This document shows positions 11,191 through 55,043 of a stretch of 64,000 nt of DNA, piece by piece. The DNA is taken from positions 414,841-478,840 of IMG/VR virus record IMGVR_UViG_3300044957_000763; one strand, given 5' to 3'. The notes below the pieces were generated by a model, which saw only the letters and a list, made by a program, of their open reading frames with translations, was not told the origin of the DNA and made no database searches. The position numbers and the translations under genes are program-made. Each line of letters begins with the position of its first letter. Position 1 is the first letter of the stretch.

Positions 11191-11265
11191 ATTGAGAGCA
11201 ATCAGAAGGATTACATTGCCAAACCGGATAAAAAGGTTGATAAGCCAATAGCCCGCTGAGAACCA

Positions 11266-11562
11266 TTGAGTGTATGCGGTCAAAATGGTGAAAACGTATT
11301 CTTCAGCCAATGGCTGAGGGTTATCGAGAGCACAAAAATGCGCCAGCTACCCAAAGAACTTCAAGCAATTGATTGCCCTGACTTGCAACGAGCAATCAAA
11401 GAGTGTGTCGAGGTAGCCGCTACTAATTGGGGCATGGATGCAAGTGAAGCATCTGATATAGTGATTGACCGCCTCAAAAGTAACTTAATGTCTCGAAAGT
11501 CCCTGGTTTCCGCACGTAGACATCTGAGAGAAATTCCAGAACAAGACTACGGAGACTATTAA
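11266..11562 (+). CDS. Hypothetical protein
   Basis: Short helical ORF filling the gap; start could be GTG 11266 or ATG 11338; followed by a terminator. Confidence 0.45.
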   Translation: MSVCGQNGENVFFSQWLRVIESTKMRQLPKELQAIDCPDLQRAIKECVEVAATNWGMDASEASDIVIDRLKSNLMSRKSLVSARRHLREIPEQDYGDY

Positions 11563-11564
11563 CC

Positions 11565-11604
11565 ATGGTCTGGATGCGCTAATGCGCGATTCAGGCCATT
11601 TTTC
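11565..11604 (+). terminator. Intrinsic terminator upstream of nrdJ
   Basis: atggtctggatgcgc-taat-gcgcgattcaggccat (imperfect stem) followed by ttttt. Confidence 0.6.
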
Positions 11605-11622
11605 ATATATCAAAGCGGCTTT

Positions 11623-11638
11623 ATGTGCGATAAGTAAA
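11623..11638 (+). promoter_or_regulatory. 16-bp element ATGTGCGATAAGTAAA, copy 2 (nrdJ leader)
   Basis: Identical copy at 4820-4835; lies just after a terminator. Confidence 0.65.
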
Positions 11639-11695
11639 AAGAACACAACGCAATAGCGAGCTCGCAATGGAGCAAAAAAAGAAGTGATAAAAACA

Positions 11696-14431: not shown

Positions 14432-14434
14432 ACT

Positions 14435-14441: not shown

Positions 14442-14449
14442 AACGCATC

Positions 14450-16558: not shown

Positions 16559-16575
16559 ACCTGCAAACAGGACAC

Positions 16576-16612
16576 AAGCACTCATGGTGAGAAAAACTCA
16601 TCATGAGTGCTT
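16576..16612 (+). promoter_or_regulatory. Hairpin covering the start codon of the GNAT gene
   Basis: aagcactcatggtgag-aaaaa-ctcatcatgagtgctt, 16 bp with one G-U pair; ATG 16603 lies in the 3' arm. Confidence 0.55.
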
Positions 16613-17135: not shown

Positions 17136-17804
17136 TTGAATTACGACGAAACACGTCTGATGTTATTGGTAAATAGGGCTCGTGGTGGCGACGAAGCGGC
17201 TTTTAATGAATTAATGCGCATTTTTGAACCTGAACTGCGCATGATTGCACAGAGGCTTTATATTGCTGGGTCGGATATTAATGATGTATTGCAAGAAACA
17301 TACATAGGACTCTGGCGTGCCGTCCTTGATTATCGAGACGACGCAGGTACATCATTCCACAACTTCGCCATAAATGTTTGTTGTAAACGCAGGGTCTACA
17401 CTGCCATTAAGGCAAGTAACGGCAAAAAGTTCAAAATCCACAACACGGCTGAAAGTCTTGACAGGTCTATAGTCACAGACGATGACGACAGTGGCCAAAC
17501 CCTGGCAGATTTCATTGTTGACCATAGTCCATCGCCGTTAGATATGATTGTCAACAAGTTAGAATATACGGATAATGTTTCAGAACTGCATTCAAAGATG
17601 ACTGGCATGGAGCAAACTGTATTCGACAGTTTCACAAAAGACCACACTTACGAAGAAATTGGTAAAGAATTAGACATTAAACCCAAAGCAGCAGACAATG
17701 CACTTATGCGCATCAGAAAGAAGGCTGCAAAAATCTACACAGAGTACAATTCAGAAGAACCCAACCCTGTCAAAAAGCCGAGGCGAAAAAACAAGTCAAA
17801 ATAG
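17136..17804 (+). CDS. sigH: SigH (Spo0H)-like RNA polymerase sigma factor
   Basis: ARGGDEAAFNEL, DINDVLQETYIGLWRAVLDY, SFHNFA..CCKRRVYTAIKASNGKK..HNTAESLD, YEEIGKEL..KPKAADNALMRIRKK: close to the SigH pattern (incl. IDNALQRVKRK). TTG start. Confidence 0.85.
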   Translation: MNYDETRLMLLVNRARGGDEAAFNELMRIFEPELRMIAQRLYIAGSDINDVLQETYIGLWRAVLDYRDDAGTSFHNFAINVCCKRRVYTAIKASNGKKFKIHNTAESLDRSIVTDDDDSGQTLADFIVDHSPSPLDMIVNKLEYTDNVSELHSKMTGMEQTVFDSFTKDHTYEEIGKELDIKPKAADNALMRIRKKAAKIYTEYNSEEPNPVKKPRRKNKSK

Positions 17805-17814
17805 CTATTCGAGA

Positions 17815-17823
17815 TGCGATAAT
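17815..17823 (+). promoter_or_regulatory. TGCGATAAT element upstream of dnaN
   Basis: Same core as the 16-bp element; also at 611-619 upstream of dnaE. Confidence 0.5.
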
Positions 17824-17866
17824 CCATATTGGATATCAGGTATATTGAATCTCGGAGAAATCATCA

Positions 17867-20108: not shown

Positions 20109-20720
20109 GTGAGAACAAGGCACTACGAATACATAGATGAGTTAGTTGTACGCGCAAAAAATGGCGACGATAACGCCTTGTTGTTGATTATTGACTTCTA
20201 TCAACCGCTACTCAAAACATCCATAAAGTATTGTGTCTCTAGATACCCGCTCGCCGCGAGATACACTGAAGACATTGAGGCAGACCTATATCTCATAATG
20301 CGCGAATTAGTTCGGCAATATGATGCAGAACTGTCATTTTTTTCCTACTTCTTGTCAACTCGTATTGACTTCGTGCTTCAAACACATGTGCGTAAAAATT
20401 ATCTCGACAGCAGTGTTGGCGGAAGGAGGCCTAGTGAAATTTTCATCGAGGATATGCCAGAAGACTGGGAACCATTCGTAGACCAAGACCCGGTTGGCAA
20501 AATTATTGCAAGTGCTGATATTTCTTCAGCGCTTTTGAAACTTGAAGACAGGTATAGAACTGCGGTTCAGTTGTACTTTTTTGAGGGTATGAACCAGCAA
20601 CAAGCGGCTGAACACTTATCCATTACACAGTCTTCATTTTCAAAAAGGCTTAACAAGGCACTAGAGCAATTAAGAGATTTTATGACTGATTTCGAAAAAA
20701 CTCTTATCACAAAGGAATAA
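20109..20720 (+). CDS. Sigma-70 family RNA polymerase sigma factor (regions 2 and 4 only)
   Basis: LVVRAKNGDDNAL, EDIEADLYL...YDAELSFFSY; region 4 LEDRYRTAVQLYFFEGMNQQQAAEHLSITQSSFSKRLNKALEQLR. Confidence 0.88.
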   Translation: MRTRHYEYIDELVVRAKNGDDNALLLIIDFYQPLLKTSIKYCVSRYPLAARYTEDIEADLYLIMRELVRQYDAELSFFSYFLSTRIDFVLQTHVRKNYLDSSVGGRRPSEIFIEDMPEDWEPFVDQDPVGKIIASADISSALLKLEDRYRTAVQLYFFEGMNQQQAAEHLSITQSSFSKRLNKALEQLRDFMTDFEKTLITKE

Positions 20721-20811
20721 TATCAACATCTGCATAATACTATATAATTAGGCTTCTCATATGTGTCACTGTCGGCACTACTTAGTACGCGCGTGTATTA
20801 AGGTATTTTTG

Positions 20812-21552
20812 ATGAAGCCACACGAGGACAATAAAGTGGCCACTCAGTCTGAAGAATTTCTTTACAATTGGAACAATCAACTAGCTTCGGGTACCCAGCG
20901 TGAGCGACAAACTCTATTGATACGCGAGGCACAATCATTACGAAAGGCAGGCTATGAGCAACGAGAAGCCCTTGATATGCTCTTGGCTGACCATCAAGAT
21001 GTTGTTGCAGTCGAAGGTGCAATTGGGTATGTCTTTGCTGACGCAAAGACAGAAAATGTGAAAGAGGTTTCCGCAGAGGCGGTCGTACCGACTTCATACA
21101 AGGATATTGCATCCATTATTGAAAGCCGATTGGCAGAAATGGGCCCAGAAAAGTTCATTAAAACATTGTGTGATGCTGCATATCCGATTGTTCGCACGTC
21201 ACAGCATGGTCGAGAGTCATTAGTTCGCCTGGCTAATTCTGCACTGAATATGCGTCATGCAATGAGCCTGCTGCATGAAACACTGGCACCGTATTTTGAA
21301 ACCGCAATGCTTGATTCTGTATTGTTGGCAAACAAGTTGGAAACCAGGGTTGCTGAAAAGCAAGCAGGTGTTTACGATTGTGAAACCAATAAAGGTTCGG
21401 TAACTGTAGACATTCGACAAGCCTCTAGTACAAGCGATAGATTCGTAGGTGGAAACTTTGCTGAATTTGGATTGGCTTGCGAATACATGGTCAAAGTAGC
21501 GGATTGTATTTCTCCGCATGAGAGGCTGAGAAAAGCTGTAAATTCAAAGTAA
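20812..21552 (+). CDS. Hypothetical protein with a degenerate SWIM-like C-terminus
   Basis: ATG 20812 with AAGG preferred over 20761; C-terminal VTVDIRQASSTSDRF...LACEYMVKV resembles a SWIM finger with lost ligands. Confidence 0.45.
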   Translation: MKPHEDNKVATQSEEFLYNWNNQLASGTQRERQTLLIREAQSLRKAGYEQREALDMLLADHQDVVAVEGAIGYVFADAKTENVKEVSAEAVVPTSYKDIASIIESRLAEMGPEKFIKTLCDAAYPIVRTSQHGRESLVRLANSALNMRHAMSLLHETLAPYFETAMLDSVLLANKLETRVAEKQAGVYDCETNKGSVTVDIRQASSTSDRFVGGNFAEFGLACEYMVKVADCISPHERLRKAVNSK

Positions 21553-21582: not shown

Positions 21583-22290
21583 ATGGCCGAAAATAAAGAT
21601 AAACAGGTCGTTAGTTCAATAGTGGTTCCCGGAATGCGAAAGGCATTTCGTGACTTGCCAGTAGAACAGCGTAAATATATTCAGGATTTGAAAGGGGACG
21701 AGCAGCCTTTTTATCCTTTGCCACCTGACCCATATGATGGTGTCACTTATGTTACTTTTCATGAGCCAAAATGTTCTATTTGCTCGTCCCCTTACAAAAC
21801 CCAACTTGAACATGTGTTTCTAGCCAATGGAGAAAGTCCTAGTGCGGTTTCTCAGTATTTCTGGTATTACTATGGCGTAATGGTCAACCCCGCTGCAATT
21901 AAGCAGCACATGAACAAACACTGCGTACTCAATGAAATAACAACATCGGGTTTGGCACAACTTCAGAAACGTGCCGAGGAGTTTGACTGGTGGCGATTGC
22001 GCAGAAGCGAACTGGTAATCACAGGGTTATTGTCGCAAATTGACCGTATTGAAGGTATACGCACAAAGGGCAACCCAGACCTTGAACTAAAGAAATCATC
22101 AGAAATGCGCGCGTTGCTTGCATCATACTCTACAGCACAAAAACAATTTGAAGAAGAAGCCAATGAGGTCATTAGCGTTCGTCATGTCTTGGCAGACATT
22201 ATGAACCTATTGACTGATGAATCTAGTAAAGAAATCATTCGCAAATACGTCAATGACCTCAGAACCAAAATTCGAGGGGATATGTCGTAA
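21583..22290 (+). CDS. Putative terminase small subunit
   Basis: CSIC...HTH-like...HMNKH N-terminal region plus a helical C-terminus; its stop overlaps the terL start. Confidence 0.55.
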   Translation: MAENKDKQVVSSIVVPGMRKAFRDLPVEQRKYIQDLKGDEQPFYPLPPDPYDGVTYVTFHEPKCSICSSPYKTQLEHVFLANGESPSAVSQYFWYYYGVMVNPAAIKQHMNKHCVLNEITTSGLAQLQKRAEEFDWWRLRRSELVITGLLSQIDRIEGIRTKGNPDLELKKSSEMRALLASYSTAQKQFEEEANEVISVRHVLADIMNLLTDESSKEIIRKYVNDLRTKIRGDMS

Positions 22291-25200
22291 TGGCAAAAGA
22301 TAAAAAACAAGACAATTTGCAACAAAAAGAAGACCTGTTGCGAGAATTGACAGAATTCAGCCAAGTTTTTAATACCGATGCTGAGATTGCAGAAGAAGAG
22401 ACATTATTTACGTTTACTTCTCAAGCACGCAGCGAGACACCAGCACCACCTGAGCCTCCGAAATCTCCCAAGAATCCATATGGATTGCATGATATTATCA
22501 CATTTTGTGAGCACCCATATTTTCTTGGTCAAACCCTCACACCAATGCAGAAAATAATCCTAAAGGCATGGTGTATGGGTTCTGAGGGCAACCAACATTT
22601 GACACTGACCAATGAAGTCACGTCAGATTGTTCTGGATGTGCATGGGATTACGTCCGAACCAAAGAAGAAGAACTGTCCAAGATTACGCTTGGAGATGGT
22701 GTTTACAAGTTGCCACCTGGCAGAGTGCCGTCTGAAAATGCGCCGTGTCTAAATTGTACTAGATTCTGCCCTGTTACAAGAGCAAAGCGATTTGAGCAAC
22801 TCAAATACGAAACCATTAATGATTTTGAATTGGAAGATGTTAAACAACGAGAAGAGGCAGAATTAGTTGACCGTTTTGAAACGGAAATGATGATGCTCGA
22901 AAGAGAAGGCATCCCGGTTAAAACCAAAGACCAAATTGTAAGAAAACTCGGTCGTGCTTTCACAGAAATGATTTTGGTAATGGGGCGTCGTAGCGGAAAG
23001 GCACTTGAACTCAATACGCCGGTGTTGACAACTAATGGATGGTCGACCATGGGCGAGTTAAAAGTCGGTGATTATGTATACGGAGAAGACGGTAGACCAA
23101 CTAAGGTTATTGCAGTCAGTCCAGTGTGGGAAAATAGGGAGTGCTTTGAAGTTGAGTTTACAACTGGCGAAGTTATTATTGCAGATGCTGCTCATGAATG
23201 GACTGTATCAGATAAAAATGCCAGAAAACACAAAGACAGATACCATGGAGTTGTTAAAACCAAAACATTAGAAACTAGAGAACTGGCTCAAAAAGTTAAA
23301 ATTGGCAAAGAATACAACTGGGCAATTGATGTGGCAAAGCCGTTAGAAAAAGAGTCTGTTGAATTACCAATTAATCCATATACTATGGGTGTTTGGCTAG
23401 GAGATGGTACTTCTCAAAACGGTTTTATCACATGCCACGAACATGAAATCATGCAACGAATTCTTGCCACTGGTGAATTTGAAAAAGTAGAACAGCATGC
23501 AAGTAATCCAAATCTATGGACATGCTTCGGTCTCAAAATAAAACTAAGAGGACTAGATGTGCTTGAGAACAAGCATATCCCAGATGTGTATTTTTGCGGG
23601 TCTTTAGAGCAAAGGTTAGAATTGCTTCGTGGGTTGGTTGATACAGATGGACATGTAGATGCGCAAGGACATGTAGAAATTGTCAGTGTGAACGAGCGGC
23701 TTGCTAGTGATATATATGCACTAGTGGCATCTGTTGGTGCAAAAGTAAAACTTTACAAAGACCGAGCAATGCTCAATGGAGTAGATTGTGGTCCTCGATA
23801 TCGCGTGTCTTTTTGTCCTCGTGGCGATATAAAAATCGCGCACCTTAAACGCAAACAAAGTAATTGTAAACCAACAGTGCACACATTGCATTCATCTCAC
23901 AGAATTCGAGATATTAGACCGTGCAACGAAAAACACAATACTGTATGTATTGAAGTGGATAATCAATCACACCTATTTCTTGTTGGTCGCTCAATGATAC
24001 CAACACACAACAGCTATCTTGTTGCAATTTTGGCACTATATGCCGTATATCGCTTGATTAAAATGGAGCATCCGCAAAAGGCATATGGTCTGATGGATTT
24101 CGATATTATTACGGTGTTGAATGTTGCTAAATCAGAAGACCAGGCAAAAGGTGCGGTTTTTGAGAAAATCTTTTCTCTGGTTCTTACGTCTCCGTTTTTT
24201 GGACCGTTCGTAGCACACTACACTCAAACCACGCTACACTTTATGACCCCAAGAGACTTGGAGGAGCACGAACGCAGAAAGCGACGTGGAATCACAGAGA
24301 AAAAAGGAACAATCAATCTGATATCCGGTCACTCCAATTCTAGCTCTCTTGTTGGTAAAACAGTTATCGTTCTCATTATTGACGAGATGGCCGAAATGGC
24401 CGGTAAAAAGGGTGACGACGGCAAAGATAAAGAGCTTTACGAAAAGCTGAAGAAATCACTTGCGACATTCGGCTCTGATGGTAAAACAATCTTGCTGTCT
24501 AACCCACTGTACGAAACGGGGGAATTTTATCGTCTGTATGAAACTTCGTTTTCTCGAGAACATGTATTGATGTTTCAGGTTCCAACTGAAATATGTAACC
24601 CAACTGTTGAAAAGTCTTATCTCGAACAAGAGCGCAAAGATAGTCCAGAATCATATTCTATGCATTTTGAGGCCCAATTCGCATCAAGTAGTAAAGACCC
24701 ATTTTTGCCACCCGATATTGTGTCCGCTGCATTTTTCAGACTTGAAAATCAAGGCCGAACAGAAATAGGAAAGCCTGGAGTCAGTTATTTTGTTCATCTT
24801 GACCCTGCATATAACTCAGATATGTACGCTCTAGCCTTAGTACATGCAGAACCAATGAAAGACAAGAAAGACAAAGATGGTCGACCATTGATGGAAGTCA
24901 TTGTCGACCATATTCATATTTGGAAGCCAAAAGACAAACACAACCCAGTCAATCCAGAAATAGTAAATCAATATGTAATTGATTTATCAAAGCGATTCAA
25001 CATAGTTCAGGTTACATATGACCACTGGAATAGCGAGTCGTCTATTTGGATTCTCAAAAGCCATGGTATCAATGCCGAGAAACGCGTGTTCTCGCCTGGA
25101 TATCAAGATATGATTTTCCAAAATATCAAAGACTTAATGATGGGAGAGCGCATACACTTTTATGGCATAGATACATGGGCACAGGATAAAAATGGAGTTG

Positions 25201-25409
25201 TGTGTGTGCGGGAAATCACTGAGGCAAAGAAGCAGTTCACATATTTAGAAAGAGTCATCAAACACAACAGACCTAAAATACAAGCACCATATGGCATCAA
25301 TGATGACGTAGTTGATGCAGTTGTGGCCGCGGCTTTTGAGTGTATCAACACTAAACAATACAAAACAACAGCAAGGCCTCGCGGTGTCAGAATGCCAAGG
25401 GCATTTTAA
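22290..25409 (+). CDS. terL: Terminase large subunit, intein-containing
   Basis: Walker A GRRSGK/S split by an intein; Walker B LIIDEMA; coupling motif LLSNP; RNase H-like nuclease VHLDPA...DDVVDAV. Confidence 0.93.
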   Translation: MAKDKKQDNLQQKEDLLRELTEFSQVFNTDAEIAEEETLFTFTSQARSETPAPPEPPKSPKNPYGLHDIITFCEHPYFLGQTLTPMQKIILKAWCMGSEGNQHLTLTNEVTSDCSGCAWDYVRTKEEELSKITLGDGVYKLPPGRVPSENAPCLNCTRFCPVTRAKRFEQLKYETINDFELEDVKQREEAELVDRFETEMMMLEREGIPVKTKDQIVRKLGRAFTEMILVMGRRSGKALELNTPVLTTNGWSTMGELKVGDYVYGEDGRPTKVIAVSPVWENRECFEVEFTTGEVIIADAAHEWTVSDKNARKHKDRYHGVVKTKTLETRELAQKVKIGKEYNWAIDVAKPLEKESVELPINPYTMGVWLGDGTSQNGFITCHEHEIMQRILATGEFEKVEQHASNPNLWTCFGLKIKLRGLDVLENKHIPDVYFCGSLEQRLELLRGLVDTDGHVDAQGHVEIVSVNERLASDIYALVASVGAKVKLYKDRAMLNGVDCGPRYRVSFCPRGDIKIAHLKRKQSNCKPTVHTLHSSHRIRDIRPCNEKHNTVCIEVDNQSHLFLVGRSMIPTHNSYLVAILALYAVYRLIKMEHPQKAYGLMDFDIITVLNVAKSEDQAKGAVFEKIFSLVLTSPFFGPFVAHYTQTTLHFMTPRDLEEHERRKRRGITEKKGTINLISGHSNSSSLVGKTVIVLIIDEMAEMAGKKGDDGKDKELYEKLKKSLATFGSDGKTILLSNPLYETGEFYRLYETSFSREHVLMFQVPTEICNPTVEKSYLEQERKDSPESYSMHFEAQFASSSKDPFLPPDIVSAAFFRLENQGRTEIGKPGVSYFVHLDPAYNSDMYALALVHAEPMKDKKDKDGRPLMEVIVDHIHIWKPKDKHNPVNPEIVNQYVIDLSKRFNIVQVTYDHWNSESSIWILKSHGINAEKRVFSPGYQDMIFQNIKDLMMGERIHFYGIDTWAQDKNGVVCVREITEAKKQFTYLERVIKHNRPKIQAPYGINDDVVDAVVAAAFECINTKQYKTTARPRGVRMPRAF
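23001..24011 (+). mobile_element. Class 3 intein (337 aa) with LAGLIDADG homing endonuclease
   Basis: Starts Ala (ALELNTPVLT), ends IPTHN before Ser+1; block B AAHEW (Trp), block F TVCIEV (Cys), block G THN (Thr); endonuclease blocks GVWLGDG and LRGLVDTDG. Confidence 0.92.
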
Positions 25410-25412
25410 TCG

Positions 25413-25441
25413 TAGGTGTATCACGATGTCTTGCTTAAAAT
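25413..25441 (+). promoter_or_regulatory. Putative phage promoter TAGGTG-N17-TAAAAT
   Basis: Intergenic, upstream of 25450; same spacing as at 28372, 37596, 49375, 55015. Confidence 0.65.
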
Positions 25442-26652: not shown

Positions 26653-26671
26653 CGTGTATAACCCGCTATAT
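26647..26671 (+). promoter_or_regulatory. TGTATAA in the loop of a hairpin overlapping the glf start codon
   Basis: atatagcg-tgtataacc-cgctatat; the 3' arm includes the AT of ATG 26670. Confidence 0.5.
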
Positions 26672-27797
26672 GGGACTAAAAAAGTACGACTTTCTAATTG
26701 TTGGTGCCGGACTTTTCGGTGCAACATTTGCAAGACACGCAAAAGACAGTGGCAAAAAGGTTCTCGTTATAGACAAGCGAGAACACATTGCCGGTAATTG
26801 TTACGATGAGAAAAAAGAGGAAGTGTATGTCGGATTGTATGGTCCTCATTTTTTACATTGCCCAGATAAAGAAACCTGGGGGTTTGTCAATCGGTTTAGT
26901 GAATTCAATAATGTCCGAGCCAGACCAAAAGTGAACTATCAAGGGCAAATTTACAGTTTCCCAATCAATTTGATGACATTTAGTCAAGTATGGGGTGTCA
27001 CAACACCGGCAGAAGCCAGGGCGAAGATTGAGGAAGAGCGGATTTTAATTGAAAACCCGGCTAATTTTGAGGAGTTTGTGCTTTCTAAAGTGGGTCGGCA
27101 AATCTACGAAATGTTCTTTGAGGGATATACAACAAAGCAATGGGGCAGACATCCGTCAGAACTACCGGCGTCTATTGCGAAAAGAATCCCAATTAGATTC
27201 ACCTATGATGATAACTACTTTCCAGACAGTCATGTCTACCAGGGAATTCCAACACAAGGATATACTAATATGTTCAAAAATATGCTAGACGGAATTGAAG
27301 TTGAACTAGGTGTTGATTATATTTCTAACAGAAAATCATTAAGTAAAATAGCCAAGCAAGTACTGTATACCGGCCCGCTTGATGCTTTGTATCATTACAG
27401 ATACGGCAAACTTGCATATCGCAGTTTAAGATTTGAAACCGAAAGAGTTAACGGTGATTTTCAAGGAAATAGTGTAATCAATTACACAGACATCAATGTT
27501 CCATACACCAGAATCACCGAATGGAAGCACAAATACAATATGGATTGTGAATATTCATATATCACACGTGAGTATCCGGCTTCTTATGAAGAGACCGGTG
27601 AAGCGTACTACCCAATAAATGACAGCGCAAATAATGCACTACACAAAAAATACCAACAACTAGCCGACGCAGACTTGTTGTTGACTGGCGGAAGAAATGC
27701 TGACTATAAGTACTATGATATGAACATGGTTATTCCGGCCGCCAGCCGGCTTGCGGAAAAAGCCATTGGGGTAGGTAAGCGCAGCTTAAGTGTGTAA
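26670..27797 (+). CDS. glf: UDP-galactopyranose mutase
   Basis: LIVGAGLFG FAD motif, HIAGNCYD, YGPHFLH, YTTKQWG, RIPIRFTYDDNYF, YQGIP, YRSLRFE, YTRITEWKH, YYPIND, GRNADYKYYDM. Confidence 0.95.
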   Translation: MGLKKYDFLIVGAGLFGATFARHAKDSGKKVLVIDKREHIAGNCYDEKKEEVYVGLYGPHFLHCPDKETWGFVNRFSEFNNVRARPKVNYQGQIYSFPINLMTFSQVWGVTTPAEARAKIEEERILIENPANFEEFVLSKVGRQIYEMFFEGYTTKQWGRHPSELPASIAKRIPIRFTYDDNYFPDSHVYQGIPTQGYTNMFKNMLDGIEVELGVDYISNRKSLSKIAKQVLYTGPLDALYHYRYGKLAYRSLRFETERVNGDFQGNSVINYTDINVPYTRITEWKHKYNMDCEYSYITREYPASYEETGEAYYPINDSANNALHKKYQQLADADLLLTGGRNADYKYYDMNMVIPAASRLAEKAIGVGKRSLSV

Positions 27798-28349: not shown

Positions 28350-28371
28350 TGTGGAAACTTTCAAAAAATCG

Positions 28372-28400
28372 TAGGTGTTGTAAACACAAATTCCTAAAGG
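28372..28400 (+). promoter_or_regulatory. Putative phage promoter TAGGTG-N17-TAAAGG
   Basis: Intergenic, upstream of 28430; shares AATCGTAGGTGT with 25408-25419. Confidence 0.65.
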
Positions 28401-28429
28401 CATAGCAACACCTAGCGAGGTAAAACATT

Positions 28430-37236: not shown

Positions 37237-37634
37237 GCCATAGACTAGCAGTTAGATTTGTCGCAGATTGCGATGAAACACGAACTCGAGGACTGATGTT
37301 CGCGAGTCCACTTGACCAAAACGAAATTGCTCTATTCGTGTTCCCACGAGCTGAGCGACACGCGTTTTGGAATAAGAACGTCGAGTTCCCATTGGACTTG
37401 GCGTTCCTCGATGAGAATGGCAAGGTCGTAGACTTCAAACATTTGGACGCACAGTCCGAATCAAGTGTACGGCCTGCTAGTCCGGCGCGTTTCGTAGTAG
37501 AGGCCGCCAAGGGCACATTCGACCGTTTGAACGTTGCTATGGGCGACTATCTTCTCTATGAAGGTTCAAACATGACAGTTGTGCGTACTAATCAGCAGGT
37601 GAATGCTAGGCAGGCGTATAAGATAATCAATTAA
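37233..37634 (+). CDS. DUF192 family protein
   Basis: RTRGLMF...LFVF...FWNKNVEFPLDLAFLDENGKV...RFVVE pattern. Confidence 0.85.
   Translation: MSHRLAVRFVADCDETRTRGLMFASPLDQNEIALFVFPRAERHAFWNKNVEFPLDLAFLDENGKVVDFKHLDAQSESSVRPASPARFVVEAAKGTFDRLNVAMGDYLLYEGSNMTVVRTNQQVNARQAYKIIN
37596..37624 (+). promoter_or_regulatory. Putative phage promoter CAGGTG-N17-TAAGAT
   Basis: In the 3' end of the DUF192 gene, upstream of 37660. Confidence 0.6.
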
Positions 37635-42185: not shown

Positions 42186-42518
42186 GTGTGGTACAAATTC
42201 GCCAACCAATACGGTGAACCAACGCCATTTATTCCAGAACCAACTCGTGAATTGGGTTCTAATGAGCAAGAGGCCTTGGCTGACGACACACCTGCATTAG
42301 ATAAGCGAATCAAAGAGTTAGCAAATCCAAAGAAAGACCCATACCAGCAAACAATTGAAGGTCAGCTTACTTCTTTGCATCACGAGAATAAAAACATGCT
42401 AGACCCTAACGGAGAGGAGCCAGATGCCTTGTGGCGTGGTTGGGGGATTAAGGCGCAAAGTGATGCAACATCGCCAGATAAGAACTGGCCAGCGGCTTTG
42501 AGCAAGGTACAAGTTTAA
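42186..42518 (+). CDS. Small hypothetical head-associated protein
   Basis: AAGGAG RBS, GTG start; N-terminal WYKFAN; TIEGQLTSLH. Confidence 0.55.
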   Translation: MWYKFANQYGEPTPFIPEPTRELGSNEQEALADDTPALDKRIKELANPKKDPYQQTIEGQLTSLHHENKNMLDPNGEEPDALWRGWGIKAQSDATSPDKNWPAALSKVQV

Positions 42519-42539: not shown

Positions 42540-44939
42540 ATGAGGAAAGACGGACAAAATGCACCGCGCCTACAGAGTGTTATTACTGAAGCTGTAGAAA
42601 GAGTCAGCAACATACAACCGAGAAACACCGTTGGTGCTCGAGAACACCCTACTATTCGCAGTGCTCGCTCATCATCAGATGTAAAGAGAGACATTCGTGC
42701 GAGATATGCATTTGTTAGTGGTAGCCAAAACACCATTACAACAGCGCCTAATTTTTACACTCCGTTCACGACACCAAGTTCTTTTCAGATTCCCACAAAC
42801 AGAATTGAAGAGTATTTGTGGGCGCAATGGTTTTTTGATAATGAACCTGCCGTTGCGGCATCTATTGAGTTTTACACAGACTTTCCGCTTTCTGGTTTCG
42901 AACTAGAATGTGGGAACTCTAAGGTTCTTGAGTTTTATCAGCAAATGGTCAAAGATTTGGATTTTGCCAGATTGCTTCCGTTGATTAGTCAAGAATACCA
43001 TCTTCGCGGCGATGTATTTGTTTATGCCTCTCTTGATTGCGAGCATTGCGGAGGAACAGGCGTCGACCAAGACACTCATGAGCCTTGCGAACACCTAGGT
43101 GCTAAATGGAAAAGCATCACGCTGCTAAACCCCACACAGGTAGAACTTAGTCCATCAATGATGGACATGCAACCAATTTACTATTACATGCCAGACGAAG
43201 GCATGAAAAAGGTTGTTCAAGAAAGAAAGCCAATTGCAACATACAAGTCAATTCCAGATGCAATTAAGGCTTATATCATGAAAAATGAGCCAATTCCGCT
43301 AGACCCAGTGTGTATCCACCACTTTAAGAGAGGTGCGGCGCCTTGGCAACCATTCGGCCGAAGTATGGTACGAAGGCTTTTTCCCACGCTTGTATACAAG
43401 GATAAGTTACGACAAGCACAGTATTTGGTTGCAGAAAGGCATATTTTACCATTCAAGATTGCCAAGTTAGGCAATGACGACCGACCAGCCAGCGAACAAG
43501 ACCTTCAAATGATTGCGGAAGAAATCGCTAATGTCGCAAACGACCCTTTGATGACAATGATTGCACCGCATACATTTGAAATTGATTATGTTGGCGCAAG
43601 TGGAAAAGTACTACAACTCACAAACGAATTCGAACTTATCAACCAAGATATTTTCGATGGATTCATGCTTAACAAAGCATTGCTCAACGGAGAAGGTCCT
43701 TCCTATGCCAATGCACAAGTTGGTCTGCTTAGTATGGGCCAGCGCCTCAATAAATTGCGCGGAGAAATCGCGCACTGGATTGAAGAAAATCTATTCAAAC
43801 CAGTTGCTGAATGGAATGGATTTGAGGTTGATAATAAGCGTGGTGGAACTAAGTTGGTTTACCCAACAGTGAAATGGGATGATTTGCAATTGCGTGATAA
43901 CACCAATCTGCTGCAAATTGCCATGCAAGCGCGACAAGCCGGAGACCTTTCCTCACAGACAATGCTCGGACTCATGGATATCAACTACGACCAAGAAATT
44001 GAAAGACTACGTATGGAAAACAGCTATGCCGTATCTACGTCTCCAATGTTGCCTGCTGGCGAAATGGGCAATGGATATCGTGGACCAATGGGTGGCGGAA
44101 TGCCGCCGATGGGTGGCGGAATGCCACCAATGGGTGGCGGAATGCCACCAATGGGTGGTGGAATGCCGCCAATGGACGGAGGAATGGGCATGCCGCCAGC
44201 ACCTGGCGGCATGCCACCGATGCCAATGGCTTCAAATAATACCCCAGAAGAAAACTATCGAGAAGCCGTGTCGTTTACCAACGCAGTACATGACAGTGTG
44301 CGCACAAGTTTCTACAATCACACACGTCAGGTTTATGCCAGCAAGTACAAATCTGAAGCACATCGGAACTTTGTTGAATCACAGTGTCCAATTGATGGAA
44401 CTGGATTCCGGGGTGTATTGGCCTCAGAAATGAGTCCATTGATTGACCCGCTAGATGATTATGGACAATATCATGGCGGAGATGAGTCTGTTCCTATGAA
44501 CCCGCTTGCAATGCAAGAACGGCAAAGTGATGTGTCAAACGGTTGGGTTCGCGAAGCAAGAAAGCCATCAAAAGATGAGGACATCAGACCAAGTCCATAT
44601 CAGAAGTTTACAAGTTGGGAAAACAAACTGTACGGAATTGTTCTGAGCATTAACCCTCCATTGCCATTCTATGCACAATACGCGGCAGGGCCTGATGACC
44701 AGTACAGGCTCGATGGTGCGTTCCCTGATATTCAACTGGGTGTTGAGGCAGATAGTGAAACCTATCATTCAACTCCAGAATATATTGAAAGAGACCGTTA
44801 CCGGGATTCACAACTAGCGGCCCAAGGATGGACTTTGTTGCGATTTACAGAAAATGAACTTAAAGAAAGACCGGACGAGGTCCAGACGTTGATTATGCGT
44901 ACAATCCAACATCTAATCAAACGCAAACTCGGGAACTAA
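42540..44939 (+). CDS. Portal protein with a Pro/Met/Gly linker and C-terminal DUF559-like nuclease-fold domain
   Basis: WFFDNEPAVAASIEFYTDFP, PFGRSMVRRLF, AERHILP.KIAKLG, WIEENLFKPVAE, VKWDDLQL portal-type pattern directly before the protease; C-terminal YRLDGAF...VEADSETYH...RDSQLAAQGWTLLRFTE. Confidence 0.75.
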   Translation: MRKDGQNAPRLQSVITEAVERVSNIQPRNTVGAREHPTIRSARSSSDVKRDIRARYAFVSGSQNTITTAPNFYTPFTTPSSFQIPTNRIEEYLWAQWFFDNEPAVAASIEFYTDFPLSGFELECGNSKVLEFYQQMVKDLDFARLLPLISQEYHLRGDVFVYASLDCEHCGGTGVDQDTHEPCEHLGAKWKSITLLNPTQVELSPSMMDMQPIYYYMPDEGMKKVVQERKPIATYKSIPDAIKAYIMKNEPIPLDPVCIHHFKRGAAPWQPFGRSMVRRLFPTLVYKDKLRQAQYLVAERHILPFKIAKLGNDDRPASEQDLQMIAEEIANVANDPLMTMIAPHTFEIDYVGASGKVLQLTNEFELINQDIFDGFMLNKALLNGEGPSYANAQVGLLSMGQRLNKLRGEIAHWIEENLFKPVAEWNGFEVDNKRGGTKLVYPTVKWDDLQLRDNTNLLQIAMQARQAGDLSSQTMLGLMDINYDQEIERLRMENSYAVSTSPMLPAGEMGNGYRGPMGGGMPPMGGGMPPMGGGMPPMGGGMPPMDGGMGMPPAPGGMPPMPMASNNTPEENYREAVSFTNAVHDSVRTSFYNHTRQVYASKYKSEAHRNFVESQCPIDGTGFRGVLASEMSPLIDPLDDYGQYHGGDESVPMNPLAMQERQSDVSNGWVREARKPSKDEDIRPSPYQKFTSWENKLYGIVLSINPPLPFYAQYAAGPDDQYRLDGAFPDIQLGVEADSETYHSTPEYIERDRYRDSQLAAQGWTLLRFTENELKERPDEVQTLIMRTIQHLIKRKLGN
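44085..44186 (+). repeat. 21-bp coding tandem repeat (PMGGGMP)n in the portal gene
   Basis: About 4.5 near-identical units of ccaatgggtggcggaatgccN. Confidence 0.9.
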
Positions 44940-44972: not shown

Positions 44973-45069
44973 TTCCAGACGATTTTTTGAAAACAAGTAG
45001 GTCTAAGGGCAAACATTGCCGAACGCACATATAGACGTTAACTTTTCAAAAAGTTGTTTTGGAGCGAGC

Positions 45070-49302: not shown

Positions 49303-49304
49303 GG

Positions 49305-49395
49305 TTTGCCGCGAACCCATCGCGGCAAATTATTCCCTCTTAAGGGACTTTTTTAAGAATCTCGCTCACTTTCGTAGGTGAGCGAGATTCTTTTT
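49305..49395 (+). terminator. Three consecutive hairpins between protease and scaffold genes
   Basis: tttgccgcga/tcgcggcaaa (49305-49329); tccct/aggga plus T6 (49334-49354); aagaatctcgctcac/gtgagcgagattctt plus T-run (49355-49395). Confidence 0.75.
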
Positions 49396-49403
49396 CATAA
49401 GAA
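49375..49403 (+). promoter_or_regulatory. Putative phage promoter TAGGTG-N17-TAAGAA
   Basis: Overlaps the third terminator hairpin; upstream of the scaffold-decoration-capsid operon. Confidence 0.65.
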
Positions 49404-51384: not shown

Positions 51385-51403
51385 GCAAACAGGAGAAATA
51401 GCA

Positions 51404-52150: not shown

Positions 52151-52174
52151 ACAGGGGTATAGGAGATAACTAAT

Positions 52175-53035
52175 ATGAGCAACATCCGAAACGTATATGG
52201 CATTGACGAGCAAAACGAAGAGTTTCTCGCAGCCGCTATGGACACCCCCGAAGGTCGCGTCGCACTTGCGCAGGCAATGGTTGAGCCCATCAAAACATCT
52301 TTGATGTACCAGGGCGTTGGCCGAAAACTGCTGATGGTTGACGAACTACCGCAGGGTGCCCTTCCTCGCTACGAGCGAGACATCGCAGTTAAGTCTTACG
52401 TAATGAGTAAGCGTGGCTCAGTTCCAACGTCTATCGTTGAAGCTGAAGAGTTGATGGTGCCGGTTCTTGAAATCGCTTGTAACCCAACCGTTAAACTCAA
52501 CGAAATCCGTGCACGACGATTCTACATTGTAGACCGAGCACAGGTTCGTGCGAAGGACTCATTGCAACGACAAGAGGATGCAGAAGTCTTCCGTGTTATT
52601 AACGCGGCTGTACCTGCGGCACACAACATCACGGTTACTGGTTCACTCCAGCCCGAGAACATCAACCTCGCTCTGTCTCTCATTGAGGAACACGAGTTGA
52701 TTGGTGCGAAGATTGTTGTGCACCCTCAGCGCTACAAGGACATCCGAACATGGGGTAAGGAATTCTATGATGAAGCGACAACTCGCGACATCTTGATGAC
52801 CGGTCTCTTCGGCCACCTGTACTCTGCAGACATCCACGTCAGCACAATCGTTCCAAAGAACGCTGTCTACGTACTGGCACCTGCCGCCTTCGTTGGCGCG
52901 ATGCCTGTTCGCCAGGACATCACCGTTCTTCCGAGCGACGACCCTCGACGACTCCGCCTCGGCTGGGTCATCTTCGAGGAACTTGGCTTCGCCGTTATCA
53001 ACGACTACGCCACCGCTCGAATCATCGTTAGCTAA
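52175..53035 (+). CDS. Major capsid protein (HK97 fold, 286 aa)
   Basis: GRVALAQAMVEPI...GVGRKLLMVDELPQG...EIACNP.V...QEDAEVF...IVVHP..YKDI...GLFGHLYSADI; strong RBS; follows protease-scaffold-decoration genes; strong terminator after it. Confidence 0.85.
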   Translation: MSNIRNVYGIDEQNEEFLAAAMDTPEGRVALAQAMVEPIKTSLMYQGVGRKLLMVDELPQGALPRYERDIAVKSYVMSKRGSVPTSIVEAEELMVPVLEIACNPTVKLNEIRARRFYIVDRAQVRAKDSLQRQEDAEVFRVINAAVPAAHNITVTGSLQPENINLALSLIEEHELIGAKIVVHPQRYKDIRTWGKEFYDEATTRDILMTGLFGHLYSADIHVSTIVPKNAVYVLAPAAFVGAMPVRQDITVLPSDDPRRLRLGWVIFEELGFAVINDYATARIIVS

Positions 53036-53054
53036 GGTTAACGCTGAAAGACTT

Positions 53055-53089
53055 ACAAGCCCCGCCATCGGCGGGGCTTGTTTGTTTGT
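53055..53089 (+). terminator. Intrinsic terminator after the capsid gene
   Basis: acaagccccgcc-atc-ggcggggcttgt followed by ttgtttgt; also faces the convergent minus-strand island. Confidence 0.88.
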
Positions 53090-53187
53090 ACAAGGTCATG
53101 CAGGTATAAAGATATTCAGAAAATGGAAAGAGACTACGTCAACACAATACGAGAAAATTGCATCAATTACATGCGTAGTTATCTAGG

Positions 53188-53745
53188 TCATGACATCAAG
53201 TAATATTCAGAGACGTCTTGACCCATGGCCGCCTCACACTTGTCAACAATCTGAACGATATAATCAGCGATACTCTTGTGCGCGACCGAAGGCAATTTAG
53301 ACATTTCGCTTAACGTGTATGTCATTTCCTTAAATGACTCCATTCTGCGCTCATCCTGTGCCAATATTTGCTGACCAATTAGCACACCAAACATTTGAGG
53401 GTCTTGAACTCCAAAATCTTTACTGTGATATTTGATAGAGTGAATTGCACGGACTGCATGTAATGCATGCTCGAACTCTGTCAAACACCGAATCAAAGAA
53501 GTGTACAGGGCTGCCAATTCGCCAGTCATTTGAATTTCTCCAGACACCAATACAGGCAACAGACTGTATTGGACTGTTCTAATACACGCACTCATTTCTG
53601 CGTTTGGTTCAAATACCATATTGGATGGCATTTGGTCTGGCGACTCATTGAGTTGTTGTTGAATATTCGACGTGCTATTGTCGATTTTGCTCCGCTCAAT
53701 TTCGTTAATATCGTCTGGAATACTGGCCTTGCGGAATCGTCTCAT
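53188..53745 (-). CDS. Hypothetical protein
   Basis: 185 aa helical ORF; start overlaps the stop of 53742..54098; N-terminal RRFRKAS. Confidence 0.55.
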   Translation of the reverse strand: MRRFRKASIPDDINEIERSKIDNSTSNIQQQLNESPDQMPSNMVFEPNAEMSACIRTVQYSLLPVLVSGEIQMTGELAALYTSLIRCLTEFEHALHAVRAIHSIKYHSKDFGVQDPQMFGVLIGQQILAQDERRMESFKEMTYTLSEMSKLPSVAHKSIADYIVQIVDKCEAAMGQDVSEYYLMS

Positions 53746-54098
53746 TGTAGCGTCAATAGATACTTGAGTTTATTCATTGCAGCAAGCATCTCATCCCTAA
53801 GATTTAGTAAGTCTGAATCAGACTGCTCGAATACGTTGTTGAACTCTATCAGATATTCAATGCAGTGACCTATGAATTCGATAGGTTCAACATTGACAGA
53901 AAGCGATATGTTCAATTTGTCTTCGCGGATTCTGCCTTGGGATTTGCCTAAATACACTTCAACAAACTCATCAACAAGTTCATCTAGTGCCTCATAGGTT
54001 TTTCCAAACGCTTCGTGTTGCGCGAAACTTTGGGTCTGCCAGTGGAACACGCGAATTTGTTGTTGAATCGTGATTAGATTTCCAATTAGCTGACTCAT
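53742..54098 (-). CDS. Ferritin/Dps-like four-helix protein (DUF5856-like)
   Basis: QIRVFHWQT.SFAQHEAF...YEALDELVDEFVE...DLLNLRDEML..MNKLKYLL pattern. Confidence 0.75.
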   Translation of the reverse strand: MSQLIGNLITIQQQIRVFHWQTQSFAQHEAFGKTYEALDELVDEFVEVYLGKSQGRIREDKLNISLSVNVEPIEFIGHCIEYLIEFNNVFEQSDSDLLNLRDEMLAAMNKLKYLLTLQ

Positions 54099-54104
54099 AG
54101 TATA

Positions 54105-54133
54105 TTGTTAGTCATGAATTCAGCTATGTCCTT
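54105..54133 (-). promoter_or_regulatory. Putative phage promoter AAGGAC-N17-TAACAA (relaxed match)
   Basis: Minus strand; predicted +1 coincides with the ATG at 54098, which has no SD. Confidence 0.4.
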
Positions 54134-54162
54134 TTATTGGAGAATAAGTTCTTAATAGCTTG

Positions 54163-54459
54163 TTAGCCTTCGGTAGTGCTTGTGTGTGTGGTCTGAACAT
54201 TGGGCAAAAATATAATCTTGCCTGATTGTGGGTCAAATTCTGGCATCTCGCTTTCTTCCAATCCAAATGGGTCTACATAATATGCTTTGAAACCATCTGT
54301 CAGCTTTTTCTCAAAAAACTGTTTGGCGCGGTCTACATCATATTCATCACCGATGTTAAACTCAAATAAAGTGTCTCTACTCTCATTCAATTCGCGCATA
54401 ATCAGCCTACTGGTCACCTGTATGGATTCCATACATATTATAGCATAAGTTGGCGCCAA
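54163..54459 (-). CDS. Hypothetical protein
   Basis: Acidic ORF in the minus-strand island; true start probably internal. Confidence 0.45.
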   Translation of the reverse strand: MAPTYAIICMESIQVTSRLIMRELNESRDTLFEFNIGDEYDVDRAKQFFEKKLTDGFKAYYVDPFGLEESEMPEFDPQSGKIIFLPNVQTTHTSTTEG

Positions 54460-54998
54460 TCAGATGCAAACATAGCCCCAAGTAACCCAGCGGTATTCCA
54501 CGCGTCCCAGTCTGCACTGTGCTCTTGGCCCTCCCATACTAGCCCGAAAGCCTCTACAGCGCGTCGAAGACCTATATTTTTGTAGCTATTAAACGCCAAC
54601 TTTGTTAACGTTGCAACATCAATACACTCGTCAGACAGAAACATTTCGCAGTTTGCAAATTCGCATTCCTTTTTTACACATGCCCAGTCGTCTCCGTACA
54701 CAGCAGTAGCGTACTGCTTCATACCCATATTTGTCATACGAGCAGCAGTGGTTGCAAGCGACTGGCCACGGCGGAGAAGTGCCGGTGTAATACCAGTCAG
54801 GTCTGTACAATACGCACTGATGGTAGAGTTCTCTGGCTTGACGTACAATGCATCACGACCAGAGCGCTCGCCTGTTTTTGGGTTCAAAAAACACCATCCA
54901 ATTTGAATGATTTCAGGAAACATTCCATCTGGAGATGGCCCGTCCCAGCAAGTGAGTTCTAGGTCGAATACCAGCATTTTATCGGCACGACGAATCAT
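54438..54998 (-). CDS. DEDDh 3'-5' exonuclease (ERI1/KapD-like)
   Basis: VFDLELTCW (ExoI), EIIQIG, CTDLTGIT, EHSADWDAWNT (ExoIII); ATG 54998 preferred over 55034. Confidence 0.85.
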   Translation of the reverse strand: MIRRADKMLVFDLELTCWDGPSPDGMFPEIIQIGWCFLNPKTGERSGRDALYVKPENSTISAYCTDLTGITPALLRRGQSLATTAARMTNMGMKQYATAVYGDDWACVKKECEFANCEMFLSDECIDVATLTKLAFNSYKNIGLRRAVEAFGLVWEGQEHSADWDAWNTAGLLGAMFASDWRQLML

Positions 54999-55014
54999 TT
55001 TATTAAGATACCAG

Positions 55015-55043
55015 AAGGTGCGACAACAATGCAACCCTAAATA
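55015..55043 (+). promoter_or_regulatory. Putative phage promoter AAGGTG-N17-TAAATA
   Basis: In the divergent gap upstream of the tail operon (55077). Confidence 0.6.

What the first reader, a model, noticed from the sequence alone, without database searches (positions are those of the whole stretch)
11206..55043. Bipartite promoter-like motif (T)AGGTG-N17-TAA in front of head and tail genes
Seen: exact AGGTG-N17-TAA at 25414, 28373, 37597, 49376 and 55016, each within 100 nt upstream of a structural gene start (25450, 28430, 37660, scaffold/capsid operon, tail operon). Relaxed AGG-N19-TAA matches occur at 11207, 20713, 27773 and minus-strand 54132; a near match AGGTA-N17-TAC precedes the portal (42505). 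The layout is canonical 6-17-6 with -35 TAGGTG instead of TTGACA. Established: B. subtilis SigH and SPO1 gp28 read AGG-containing -35 elements. Inference: this is the late promoter read by one of the phage sigma factors, most plausibly the SigH-like one. Roughly one exact match per strand is expected by chance in 64 kb, and I did not scan all coding DNA.
Basis: partly seen in the sequence, partly recalled or inferred. Interest (0 to 1): 0.8.

Follow-up and report, generated by a model that had tools for sequence, protein, structure and literature searches.

The report
Conserved SigH-type promoters in a huge phage
The motif is real: nine copies of a two-part promoter-like signal (AGG, 19 bases, then TAA or GAA) sit in front of operons of a 479-kb lake phage, are kept in distant relatives while the DNA between the two parts changes, and match the promoter type read by SigH-family sigma factors, one of which the phage encodes.

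Summary
AGGTG-N17-TAA occurs 6 times, all on the + strand (shuffles: mean 1.85, none reach 6). Five of the six lie 36-98 nt upstream of a start codon.

Comparison with relatives shows a smaller conserved core, AGG-N19-[T/G]AA (clade consensus about G-N-AGGT-N16-C-N-TAA).

Three matches are not supported. The near match at 42505 lacks the second box. 27773 is ambiguous.

Across the wider family (GC 37-59%) the element reads (G)CAGG-N19-GAA(T/G). This equals the published SigH promoter layout, AGGA, 17-18 nt, GAAT. The phage gene at 17136-17804 is SigH-like by NCBIfam and by its best PDB match.

The best reading is a phage SigH-like sigma directing host RNA polymerase to the virion-gene operons. 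The class also precedes a small ORF beside the ribonucleotide reductase gene, so it is not purely head and tail. No transcript 5' ends were available. This is a new member of a known kind.

The parts
11205..11232 (+). Promoter-like site P0. AGG at 11207-11209, TAA at 11229-11231. It lies 59 nt upstream of the 98-aa ORF at 11266, which precedes the ribonucleotide reductase gene.
   Evidence: The outgroup contig JAFDWS010000002.1 has GGCAGGAAG...GAGAAG with the same AGG-N19-GAA spacing at the same place, just after the upstream gene's stop (L220 position 6742).
20711..20738 (+). Promoter-like site P1. AGG at 20713-20715, TAA at 20735-20737. It overlaps the stop codon of the second sigma gene and lies upstream of the 246-aa, 235-aa and terminase genes.
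   Evidence: The outgroup keeps CAAGGAAT...GCATAAC with the same spacing. The site is fully intergenic there and the spacer has changed.
25412..25439 (+). Promoter-like site P2. TCGTAGGTG, 15 nt, then CTTAAA. AGG at 25414, TAA at 25436. It begins 5 nt after the terminase stop and 36 nt before the ATG at 25450, which implies a very short or absent leader.
   Evidence: Conserved in L206-L210. The outgroup has CCGTAGGTA...CATAAA with a diverged spacer.
28371..28398 (+). Promoter-like site P3. TCGTAGGTG, 15 nt, then CCTAAA. It lies 57 nt upstream of the 173-aa gene at 28430, which heads an operon containing the 2502-aa protein.
   Evidence: The boxes are kept in six relatives while the spacer varies. 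The outgroup has GGCAGGTG...CCGAAC (AGG-N19-GAA).
37595..37622 (+). Promoter-like site P4. CAGCAGGTG, 15 nt, then TATAAG. It lies inside the 3' end of the DUF192 gene (37233-37634), 63 nt upstream of the 415-aa gene at 37660.
   Evidence: In outgroup L214 it reads CGCAGGTG, 15 nt, CATAAG, with 10 of 15 spacer bases changed.
44997..45024 (+). AAGTAGGTC, 15 nt, then CCGAAC. AGG at 44999-45001, GAA at 45021-45023. It follows a terminator hairpin after the portal gene and lies 71 nt before the corrected ATG at 45070 of the ~1410-aa gene.
   Evidence: Conserved in L211-L214 and L223, with -10 variants CGAA, AGAA and ATAA. An equivalent site sits in the same intergenic region of about 9 AT-rich relatives.
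49374..49401 (+). Promoter-like site P6. TCGTAGGTG, 15 nt, then CATAAG. It lies 98 nt upstream of the scaffold-like gene at 49474, which is followed by the major capsid gene at 52175-53035.
   Evidence: 22 of 24 distinct orthologous intergenic regions carry one AGG-N18-A[G/T/A]AA, always at spacing 18; outgroup and MAG contigs. RNA contigs in two of three metatranscriptomes cover only DNA downstream of this site.
49303..49395 (+). Three tandem hairpins after the 1428-aa gene. The third is a 17-bp stem followed by a T-run. It carries the -35 box of P6 in its loop and 3' arm.
   Evidence: minimum free energy -50.9 kcal/mol, z = -10.3 against shuffles.
55014..55041 (+). Promoter-like site P7. CAGAAGGTG, 15 nt, then CCTAAA. 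It lies in the divergent region 61 nt upstream of 55077, the PHROG 644 gene that is followed by tail-fibre-like genes.
   Evidence: variant L124 has AGTAGGTG...CCTAAA with a changed spacer; the outgroup has TTGCAGGTC...TGTAAA 45 nt before the orthologous 131-aa gene.
54107..54134 (-). Candidate site P8 on the minus strand. AAAAGGAC...ACTAAC, with 9 nt between the TAA and the ATG of gene 53742-54098, which suggests a leaderless message.
   Evidence: L124 and L125 have AAAGGG...CGAATA at the same distance from the ATG, although the upstream DNA is different. This rests on one comparison, so it is weaker than the other sites.
17136..17804 (+). SigH-like sigma factor gene, the proposed reader of the sites.
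   Evidence: Pfam Sigma70_r2 and r4_2. The top five NCBIfam hits are SigH equivalogs, E 8e-33, 113 bits, below the 208-bit cutoff. The best PDB hit is 3mzy_A, 'sigma-H factor', E 3e-11. The region 4.2 helix-turn-helix is nearly invariant across 8 homologues of 44-93% identity.
20109..20720 (+). Second sigma-family gene, of generic ECF type. It is the alternative candidate reader.
   Evidence: Pfam Sigma70_r4 and r4_2. NCBIfam sigma70-ECF superfamily. The best PDB hit is SigW. It is present in all syntenic relatives.

Best explanation
These are promoters of one class, with consensus in this clade of about G-N-AGGT(G), 15 nt, C-N-TAA. The invariant core is AGG, 19 nt, then T/G-A-A.

Proposed mechanism: host core RNA polymerase carrying the phage's SigH-like sigma (gene 17136-17804) binds AGG through region 4.2 as the -35 element and [T/G]AA through region 2 as positions -12 to -10. 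Transcription would start about 12 nt after the T or G.

Each site sits at an operon boundary, often just after an intrinsic terminator. Together they head the terminase, giant-protein, portal, scaffold-capsid and tail-fibre operons, plus one small ORF beside the reductase gene.

The sigma gene lies among replication genes, which carry a different, sigma-70-like promoter motif. This suggests a cascade: host sigma first, then phage sigma, then the virion genes.

What is shown: the sites exist, they are enriched upstream of genes, their boxes and spacing are conserved across deep divergence, they match the SigH layout, and a SigH-like gene is present. What is inferred: that they are transcribed from, which sigma reads them, and when.
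For: Enrichment in the window: 6 exact matches against 1.85 expected, all on the gene strand. Five of six lie 30-140 nt upstream of starts (p = 2e-5). Spacing 19 stands out from N13-N25.

Conservation with variable spacers:
- Before the scaffold gene, 22 of 24 distinct orthologous intergenic regions have a single AGG-N18-A[G/T/A]AA, always at spacing 18.
- A position weight matrix scan of the relatives gave 43 of 44 hits on the gene strand and 38 of 44 intergenic.
- The outgroup contig, with 54-76% protein identity, keeps all eight + strand sites.
- A relative with 57% GC and 45% sigma identity has AGG-N19-GAA in the orthologous P0, P1, P2 and P3 intergenic regions.
- Coding-region matches are kept in the outgroup in only 3 of 17 alignable cases.

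Layout: SigH promoters have AGGA, then 17-18 nt, then GAAT (PMC12456013), which equals AGG-N18/19-GAA.

Sigma identity. A different, sigma-70-like motif (TTGACA-N17-GCGATAAC in the outgroup, TGTGCGATAAG in the window) marks the replication genes.

RNA: assembled RNA contigs in two of three metatranscriptomes cover only DNA downstream of P6. This is weak evidence.
Against: - No transcript 5' ends, in vitro transcription or genetics exist for this phage, and it has no cultured host.
- In the window clade the -10 core is TAA rather than the SigH GAAT, and its base after AGG is usually T rather than A.
- The sigma scores below NCBIfam's SigH equivalog cutoff (113 against 208 bits).
- A second sigma-family gene co-occurs in every relative, so presence and absence cannot tell the two apart.
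- The sigma alignment showed no clear residue change tracking the G/T difference.
- Bacillus phage G, the nearest cultured relative, shows no such motif in the intergenic DNA of its first 50 kb.
- The close relatives are not independent samples.
- One RNA run (X19) had a single 18.9-kb contig crossing P6.
Confidence: 0.65

Rival explanations
1. The sites are promoters, but they are read by the second phage sigma (ECF-type, 20109-20720) or by an unseen factor encoded elsewhere in the 479-kb genome, not by the SigH-like protein.
For: The second sigma is conserved in every syntenic relative and lies immediately upstream of site P1. Only 64 kb of the 479-kb genome was examined.
Against: From my own knowledge, ECF sigmas typically read AAC-type -35 and CGT-type -10 elements, which are absent here. 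The AGG-N19-GAA layout matches SigH, and the SigH-like protein's region 4.2 is nearly invariant alongside the invariant AGG.
Confidence: 0.12
2. The sites are read by a host sigma. Either the host's own SigH-type factor reads them, or the housekeeping sigma is redirected by a phage activator that binds the AGG box, as T4 MotA/AsiA does at middle promoters.
For: In AT-rich relatives the -10 often reads TAGAAT, one base from TATAAT. Sigma appropriation is an established phage strategy (my own knowledge).
Against: The T at the last -10 position, which is critical for housekeeping sigmas, is not conserved. The window-clade -10 forms CTTAAA, CCTAAA and CCGAAC are poor housekeeping -10 elements. The phage carries its own SigH-like gene throughout the family. 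The replication genes already carry a separate canonical TTGACA-N17 motif.
Confidence: 0.15
3. The matches are not promoters. They could be chance, ribosome-binding-like AGG strings, or parts of RNA structures such as terminators or processing sites.
For: AGGTG resembles a Shine-Dalgarno core. At P6 the box lies inside a terminator hairpin. At P3 it forms a stem with one compensatory change in relatives. Match 39797 is a chance hit.
Against: The AGG lies 36-98 nt from start codons, and separate GAGG or GGAG ribosome sites lie nearer the starts. The two boxes keep an exact 19-nt distance across genomes of 37-59% GC while spacers and hairpins change or disappear. The spacing control and the strand bias also argue against chance.
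Confidence: 0.05

Closest known systems
SigH (sigma-H, Spo0H) promoters of Firmicutes
   Same: A two-box layout with AGG(A) at -35 and GAA(T) at -10, separated by 17-18 nt (PMC12456013). The cognate sigma is a small two-domain protein, and the phage protein's best family and PDB matches are SigH.
   Different: In the window clade the -10 core is TAA, not GAAT, and the base after AGG is usually T. The sigma scores below the SigH equivalog cutoff. It is carried by a phage and drives virion genes, not stationary-phase or sporulation genes. The host is unknown, and related contigs sit in MAGs labelled Armatimonadota, which is weak evidence.
Bacillus phage SPO1 gp28 (middle) and gp33/gp34 (late) sigma cascade
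   Same: A phage-encoded sigma replaces the host sigma to switch promoter class (PMC13401047). gp28 groups with sigH, sigD and sigI in a sigma phylogeny (bioRxiv 10.1101/2021.11.12.468384). From my own knowledge, the gp28 -35 is AGGAGA, which also contains AGG.
   Different: From my own knowledge, SPO1 middle -10 is TTTNTTT and late promoters are CGTTAGA/GATATT, neither like [T/G]AA. No gp33- or gp34-like proteins were identified here.
T4-type late transcription (gp55, gp33, sliding clamp; TATAAATA)
   Same: A phage sigma-family protein directs host polymerase to virion genes. Here a phage sliding clamp and clamp-loader genes flank the sigma gene.
   Different: T4 late promoters have no -35 element. 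Here an invariant AGG box lies at a fixed distance and the sigma has a region 4.
Bacillus phage G (Donellivirus gee)
   Same: The nearest cultured relative. Its capsid is 49% and its portal 28% identical. It also encodes sigma factors near its terminase and clamp-loader genes.
   Different: No AGG-N19-GAA enrichment in the intergenic DNA of its first 50 kb. The search found no published promoter consensus for it.

Membership tests
SigH-type promoter | -35 element AGGA | tested here: met
   AGG is invariant at all 17 aligned sites in the window and the outgroup and in 23 relatives' sites. The fourth base is T, A or G.
SigH-type promoter | -10 element GAAT | tested here: inconclusive
   The family-wide form is GAA followed by T, G or A. 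In the window clade it is TAA at 8 of 9 sites and GAA at 1.
SigH-type promoter | Spacer of 17-18 nt between AGGA and GAAT | tested here: met
   AGG-N19-[G/T]AA equals AGGN-N18-[G/T]AA. The spacing is fixed in all sites. The reference value comes from PMC12456013.
SigH-type promoter | Transcription depends on a SigH-family sigma, with a primary 5' end downstream of the -10 | not testable with these tools
   Only assembled contigs of RNA runs were available, and they carry no 5'-end information.
SigH sigma factor family (NCBIfam equivalogs NF006148, TIGR02859) | Score above the curated equivalog cutoff | tested here: not met
   113.6 bits against a 208 cutoff, and 111.2 against 294.8. It is the best-matching family by about 18 orders of magnitude in E-value over the generic sigma-70 model, so the protein is SigH-like, not a SigH orthologue.
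SigH sigma factor family (NCBIfam equivalogs NF006148, TIGR02859) | Full-length two-domain architecture (regions 2 and 4) | tested here: met
   The match covers residues 4-201 of 222 against model positions 16-211 of 218. Pfam finds Sigma70_r2 and r4_2.
Phage sigma-dependent late promoter class | A repeated motif confined to upstream regions of virion and morphogenesis operons | tested here: inconclusive
   Seven sites head terminase, head, portal, capsid and tail-side operons. Site 11207 precedes a small ORF beside the reductase gene. Timing was not measured.

The most novel reading that the evidence does not exclude
A SigH-family sigma and its AGG-N19-GAA promoters may form the conserved middle/late transcription switch of a widespread clade of phage-G-like huge phages. 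Relatives were found in lake, river, soil and wastewater samples, and their hosts may not be Firmicutes, since related contigs are binned with Armatimonadota.

Within this clade one lineage has shifted the -12 base from G to T at nearly all promoters. That would be a natural case of sigma-promoter co-evolution, and of a Firmicute-type alternative sigma working on foreign core polymerases.
Probability: 0.25. Interest if true: 0.6.

Novelty: new member of a known kind. Interest (0 to 1): 0.45.

Why it matters
Huge phages of the phage G lineage are common in fresh water, but almost nothing is known about how they time gene expression, and none of this clade is cultured.

This result gives a concrete promoter consensus tied to a named phage sigma, with nine mapped sites and orthologous sites in genomes of 37-59% GC. 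That makes operon boundaries and expression classes predictable from sequence alone. It also offers a simple biochemical test: recombinant sigma, a core polymerase and short DNA fragments.

Finally, it shows a lineage-specific G-to-T change at one promoter position that could be used to study how sigma specificity evolves.

Tried and rejected
- Collection scan for ATCGTAGGTG-N17-TAAA.

- The 9-mer TCGTAGGTG as the motif. It occurs 4 times in the window but is not kept in relatives. The fourth copy, at 21443, lacks the second box. The conserved core is shorter.

- A weight matrix built from AT-rich relatives. It did not transfer to the window, where P6 scored 8.6 against 18-27 for the relatives. 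Window sites were therefore judged by orthology instead.

- Protein-based scans of the viral collection with the scaffold, giant-protein and reductase genes. They returned only the source contig or unrelated phages.

- The gene at 26670-27797 as a synteny marker. It proved to be a widely transferred UDP-galactopyranose mutase.

- Phage G. No comparable intergenic motif in its first 50 kb.

- An automated BLAST conservation test. It worked for coding matches (3 of 17 kept) but could not align the diverged intergenic DNA, so those sites were anchored by hand on the flanking genes.

- Sigma alignment. No convincing specificity-determining change was found. The only clade-specific difference noted is Tyr in place of Arg in the QET(Y/R)IG stretch, and the outgroup with Arg also uses TAA.

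- Rfam and tRNA scans of the window found nothing. A generic sigma-70 scan gave no more matches than shuffles did.

- The share of about 0.2 of the stretch's sampled words held by many unrelated metagenomes. This proved to be relatives about 92% identical, not a mobile element.
Full report
WHAT THE WINDOW IS

The window is the last 64 kb of a 478,840-bp viral contig from lake water. Almost all genes are on the + strand.

- Bases 1-22 kb hold replication genes: DNA polymerase III alpha, RecA, primase, RecJ, ribonucleotide reductase, clamp loader, sliding clamp and a delta-like subunit. Two sigma-family genes lie among them, at 17136-17804 and 20109-20720.
- From 22 kb on come an intein-containing large terminase, a UDP-galactopyranose mutase, a 2502-aa protein with no family match, the portal, a ~1410-aa protein with a Mu-F/protease-like N-terminus, an acidic scaffold-like protein, the major capsid protein (52175-53035) and tail-fibre-like genes.
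- The nearest cultured relative is Bacillus phage G, with 49% capsid and 28% portal identity.

THE OBSERVATION

AGGTG-N17-TAA matches six times, all on the + strand. Shuffles give a mean of 1.85 and never six.

Three intergenic matches (25414, 28373, 49376) share the longer TCGTAGGTG.

With gene starts corrected from relatives, 5 of 6 exact matches lie 30-140 nt upstream of a same-strand start (p = 2e-5). For the core AGG-N19-[GT]AA, 11 of 51 matches do (p = 1e-4). Among spacings N13-N25, only 19 stands out, with 11 in the zone against 0-6.

COMPARATIVE EVIDENCE

The capsid protein found 80 related loci in metagenomes at 75-83% identity, with the same gene order.

In the intergenic region before the scaffold gene, 22 of 24 distinct sequences carry exactly one AGG-N18-A[G/T/A]AA, always at spacing 18. 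It lies downstream of a terminator hairpin, and the DNA around it cannot be aligned.

The exact 9-mer is not kept in relatives. The family consensus is (T/A)GCAGG(T/A) or AAAAGGTG, then T-rich DNA, then (T/C)AGAA(T/G).

A weight matrix from these sites hit the relatives' loci 44 times. Of these, 43 were on the gene strand and 38 were intergenic. They include a second, independent site between the portal gene and the ~1400-aa gene in about nine relatives.

Closer relatives and a useful outgroup were reached through terminase, 415-aa-protein and sigma homologues. The outgroup is contig JAFDWS010000002.1. Its terminase is 76%, its 415-aa protein 54% and its sigma 73% identical to the window's.

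All eight + strand sites are present in the outgroup at the orthologous place with the same AGG-to-[T/G]AA distance and diverged spacers. Examples:
- P4 reads CAGCAGGTG, 15 nt, TATAAG in the window and CGCAGGTG, 15 nt, CATAAG in the outgroup, with 10 of 15 spacer bases changed.
- P3 is TCGTAGGTG...CCTAAA in the window and GGCAGGTG...CCGAAC in the outgroup.
- P1 lies partly in coding DNA in the window but is fully intergenic in the outgroup.

A new site, P5 at 44999 (AAGTAGGTC...CCGAAC), appeared once relatives showed that the ~1410-aa gene starts at ATG 45070, not at TTG 45016.

A relative with 57% GC and only 45% sigma identity has AGG-N19-GAA in the orthologous P0, P1, P2 and P3 regions.

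By contrast, 39797 loses both boxes in relatives through synonymous-type changes. 42505 has no second box. 27773 is confounded by a conserved C-terminal coding sequence and a stop codon. Of the coding-region matches that could be aligned to the outgroup, only 3 of 17 are kept.

WHAT IT RESEMBLES

A transcription-start-site study of a Firmicute describes SigH motifs as -35 AGGA and -10 GAAT with 17-18 nt spacers, like those of B. subtilis and C. difficile (PMC12456013). That layout is AGG-N18/19-GAA, the same geometry as here.

The protein from 17136-17804 has SigH equivalogs as its five best NCBIfam hits (E 8e-33 to 2e-28). It is below their cutoffs, so it is SigH-like rather than an orthologue. 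Its best PDB match is a 'sigma-H factor', and JGI labels its homologues sigma-H.

Its region 4.2 helix-turn-helix is nearly invariant among eight homologues of 44-93% identity, in line with the invariant AGG.

The second sigma is of generic ECF type.

A SECOND PROMOTER CLASS

The replication genes carry another conserved motif: TG-N-GCGATAA(G/T) at about 4821, 11624 and 17814. In the outgroup it reads TTGACA-N17-GCGATAAC, which is canonical sigma-70 type.

The SigH-like gene is not preceded by an AGG-N19-[GT]AA site. This fits a cascade in which host sigma drives the replication genes and the phage sigma, and the phage sigma then drives the AGG class. The timing itself was not measured.

ANATOMY

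- Sites follow terminator hairpins at P5 and P6. At P6 a 17-bp hairpin with a T-run contains the -35 box.
- At P3 the -35 box pairs with a segment 25 nt downstream, and relatives show one compensatory change. The meaning of this is unknown.
- If [T/G] is position -12, the start falls about 12 nt later. That gives ordinary leaders with GAGG or GGAG ribosome sites at P3, P4, P6 and P7, and almost no leader at P2 and at the minus-strand site. This is inference.

RNA DATA

Only assembled contigs of relatives about 92% identical were available. Two of three metatranscriptomes had contigs only downstream of P6, from 49461 in one and from 49749 in the other. The third had one long contig across the site. 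This is weakly supportive and gives no 5' ends.

VERDICT

The element is a conserved promoter class most likely read by the phage's SigH-like sigma. It is not strictly a head-and-tail class. The window lineage prefers TAA where the wider family has GAA.

Phage sigma cascades are a well-known kind of system, so this counts as a new member of a known kind.

Noticed in passing
window 4821-4838, 11624-11642, 17814-17826: A second conserved promoter-like motif, TG-N-GCGATAA(G/T), sits in front of replication genes. The first two copies share a 16-mer. In the outgroup the copy before the reductase gene reads TTGACA-N17-GCGATAAC, a canonical sigma-70 layout. These are probably host-sigma early or middle promoters.
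   Followed up: partly
window 4894, 9764, 14435, 20085: TGTATAA(A/G) recurs in short intergenic regions of the replication module. CTTGTATAAGAC at 4892 is kept in the outgroup and in a 58% GC relative. It may be a third promoter-like element or an extended -10.
   Followed up: partly
window 22290-25409; L206 10001-12109: The large terminase carries a LAGLIDADG intein in this phage (1039 aa). The intein is absent from relatives with 92% identical exteins (702 aa). In one relative (L211) the portal gene is 1143 aa and has a LAGLIDADG hit instead.
   Followed up: partly
window 42540-44939: The portal protein has a C-terminal DUF559/MTES_1575 endonuclease-like domain (residues ~721-789), and the same domain appears in relatives.
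   Followed up: no
window 26670-27797: A UDP-galactopyranose mutase (Glf) gene lies in the operon headed by site P2, between the terminase gene and the giant-protein operon. It is conserved in all syntenic relatives.
   Followed up: partly
L209, L214, L220, L223 (JAFDWS010000002.1, 127-184 kb): The outgroup phage region sits on a 1.36-Mb contig of a MAG labelled Armatimonadota. Another capsid relative lies in a Fimbriimonas (Armatimonadota) MAG, and others lie in Bacteriovoracaceae and Bacteroidetes MAGs. This could be a host hint, a prophage or a binning or assembly artefact. It was not resolved.
   Followed up: no
window 45016 vs 45070; 20761 vs ~20812; 54998 vs 55034: The mechanical first-start rule mis-places several gene starts. 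Relatives' gene calls and ribosome sites indicate ATG 45070 for the ~1410-aa gene and a later start for the gene after the second sigma. The start of the minus-strand gene ending near 55000 is uncertain.
   Followed up: partly
window 28373-28416: The -35 box of P3 (AGGTGTTG) pairs with CAACACCT 25 nt downstream. Relatives show a compensatory T-A to C-G change. The fold has z = -3.2. Its function is unknown.
   Followed up: partly
window 16569-16610: AGG-N19-GAA lies 34 nt before ORF 16603 and is kept in close relatives. It overlaps an inverted repeat (GGCACTCATG / CATGAGTGCC) that spans the ORF's start, and the ORF is missing in the outgroup. Whether this is a promoter or a terminator is unclear.
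   Followed up: partly
window 29728-37236: A 2502-aa ORF has no Pfam hit and no close relatives in the viral collection. It is conserved at 2390-2616 aa in all syntenic relatives.
   Followed up: no
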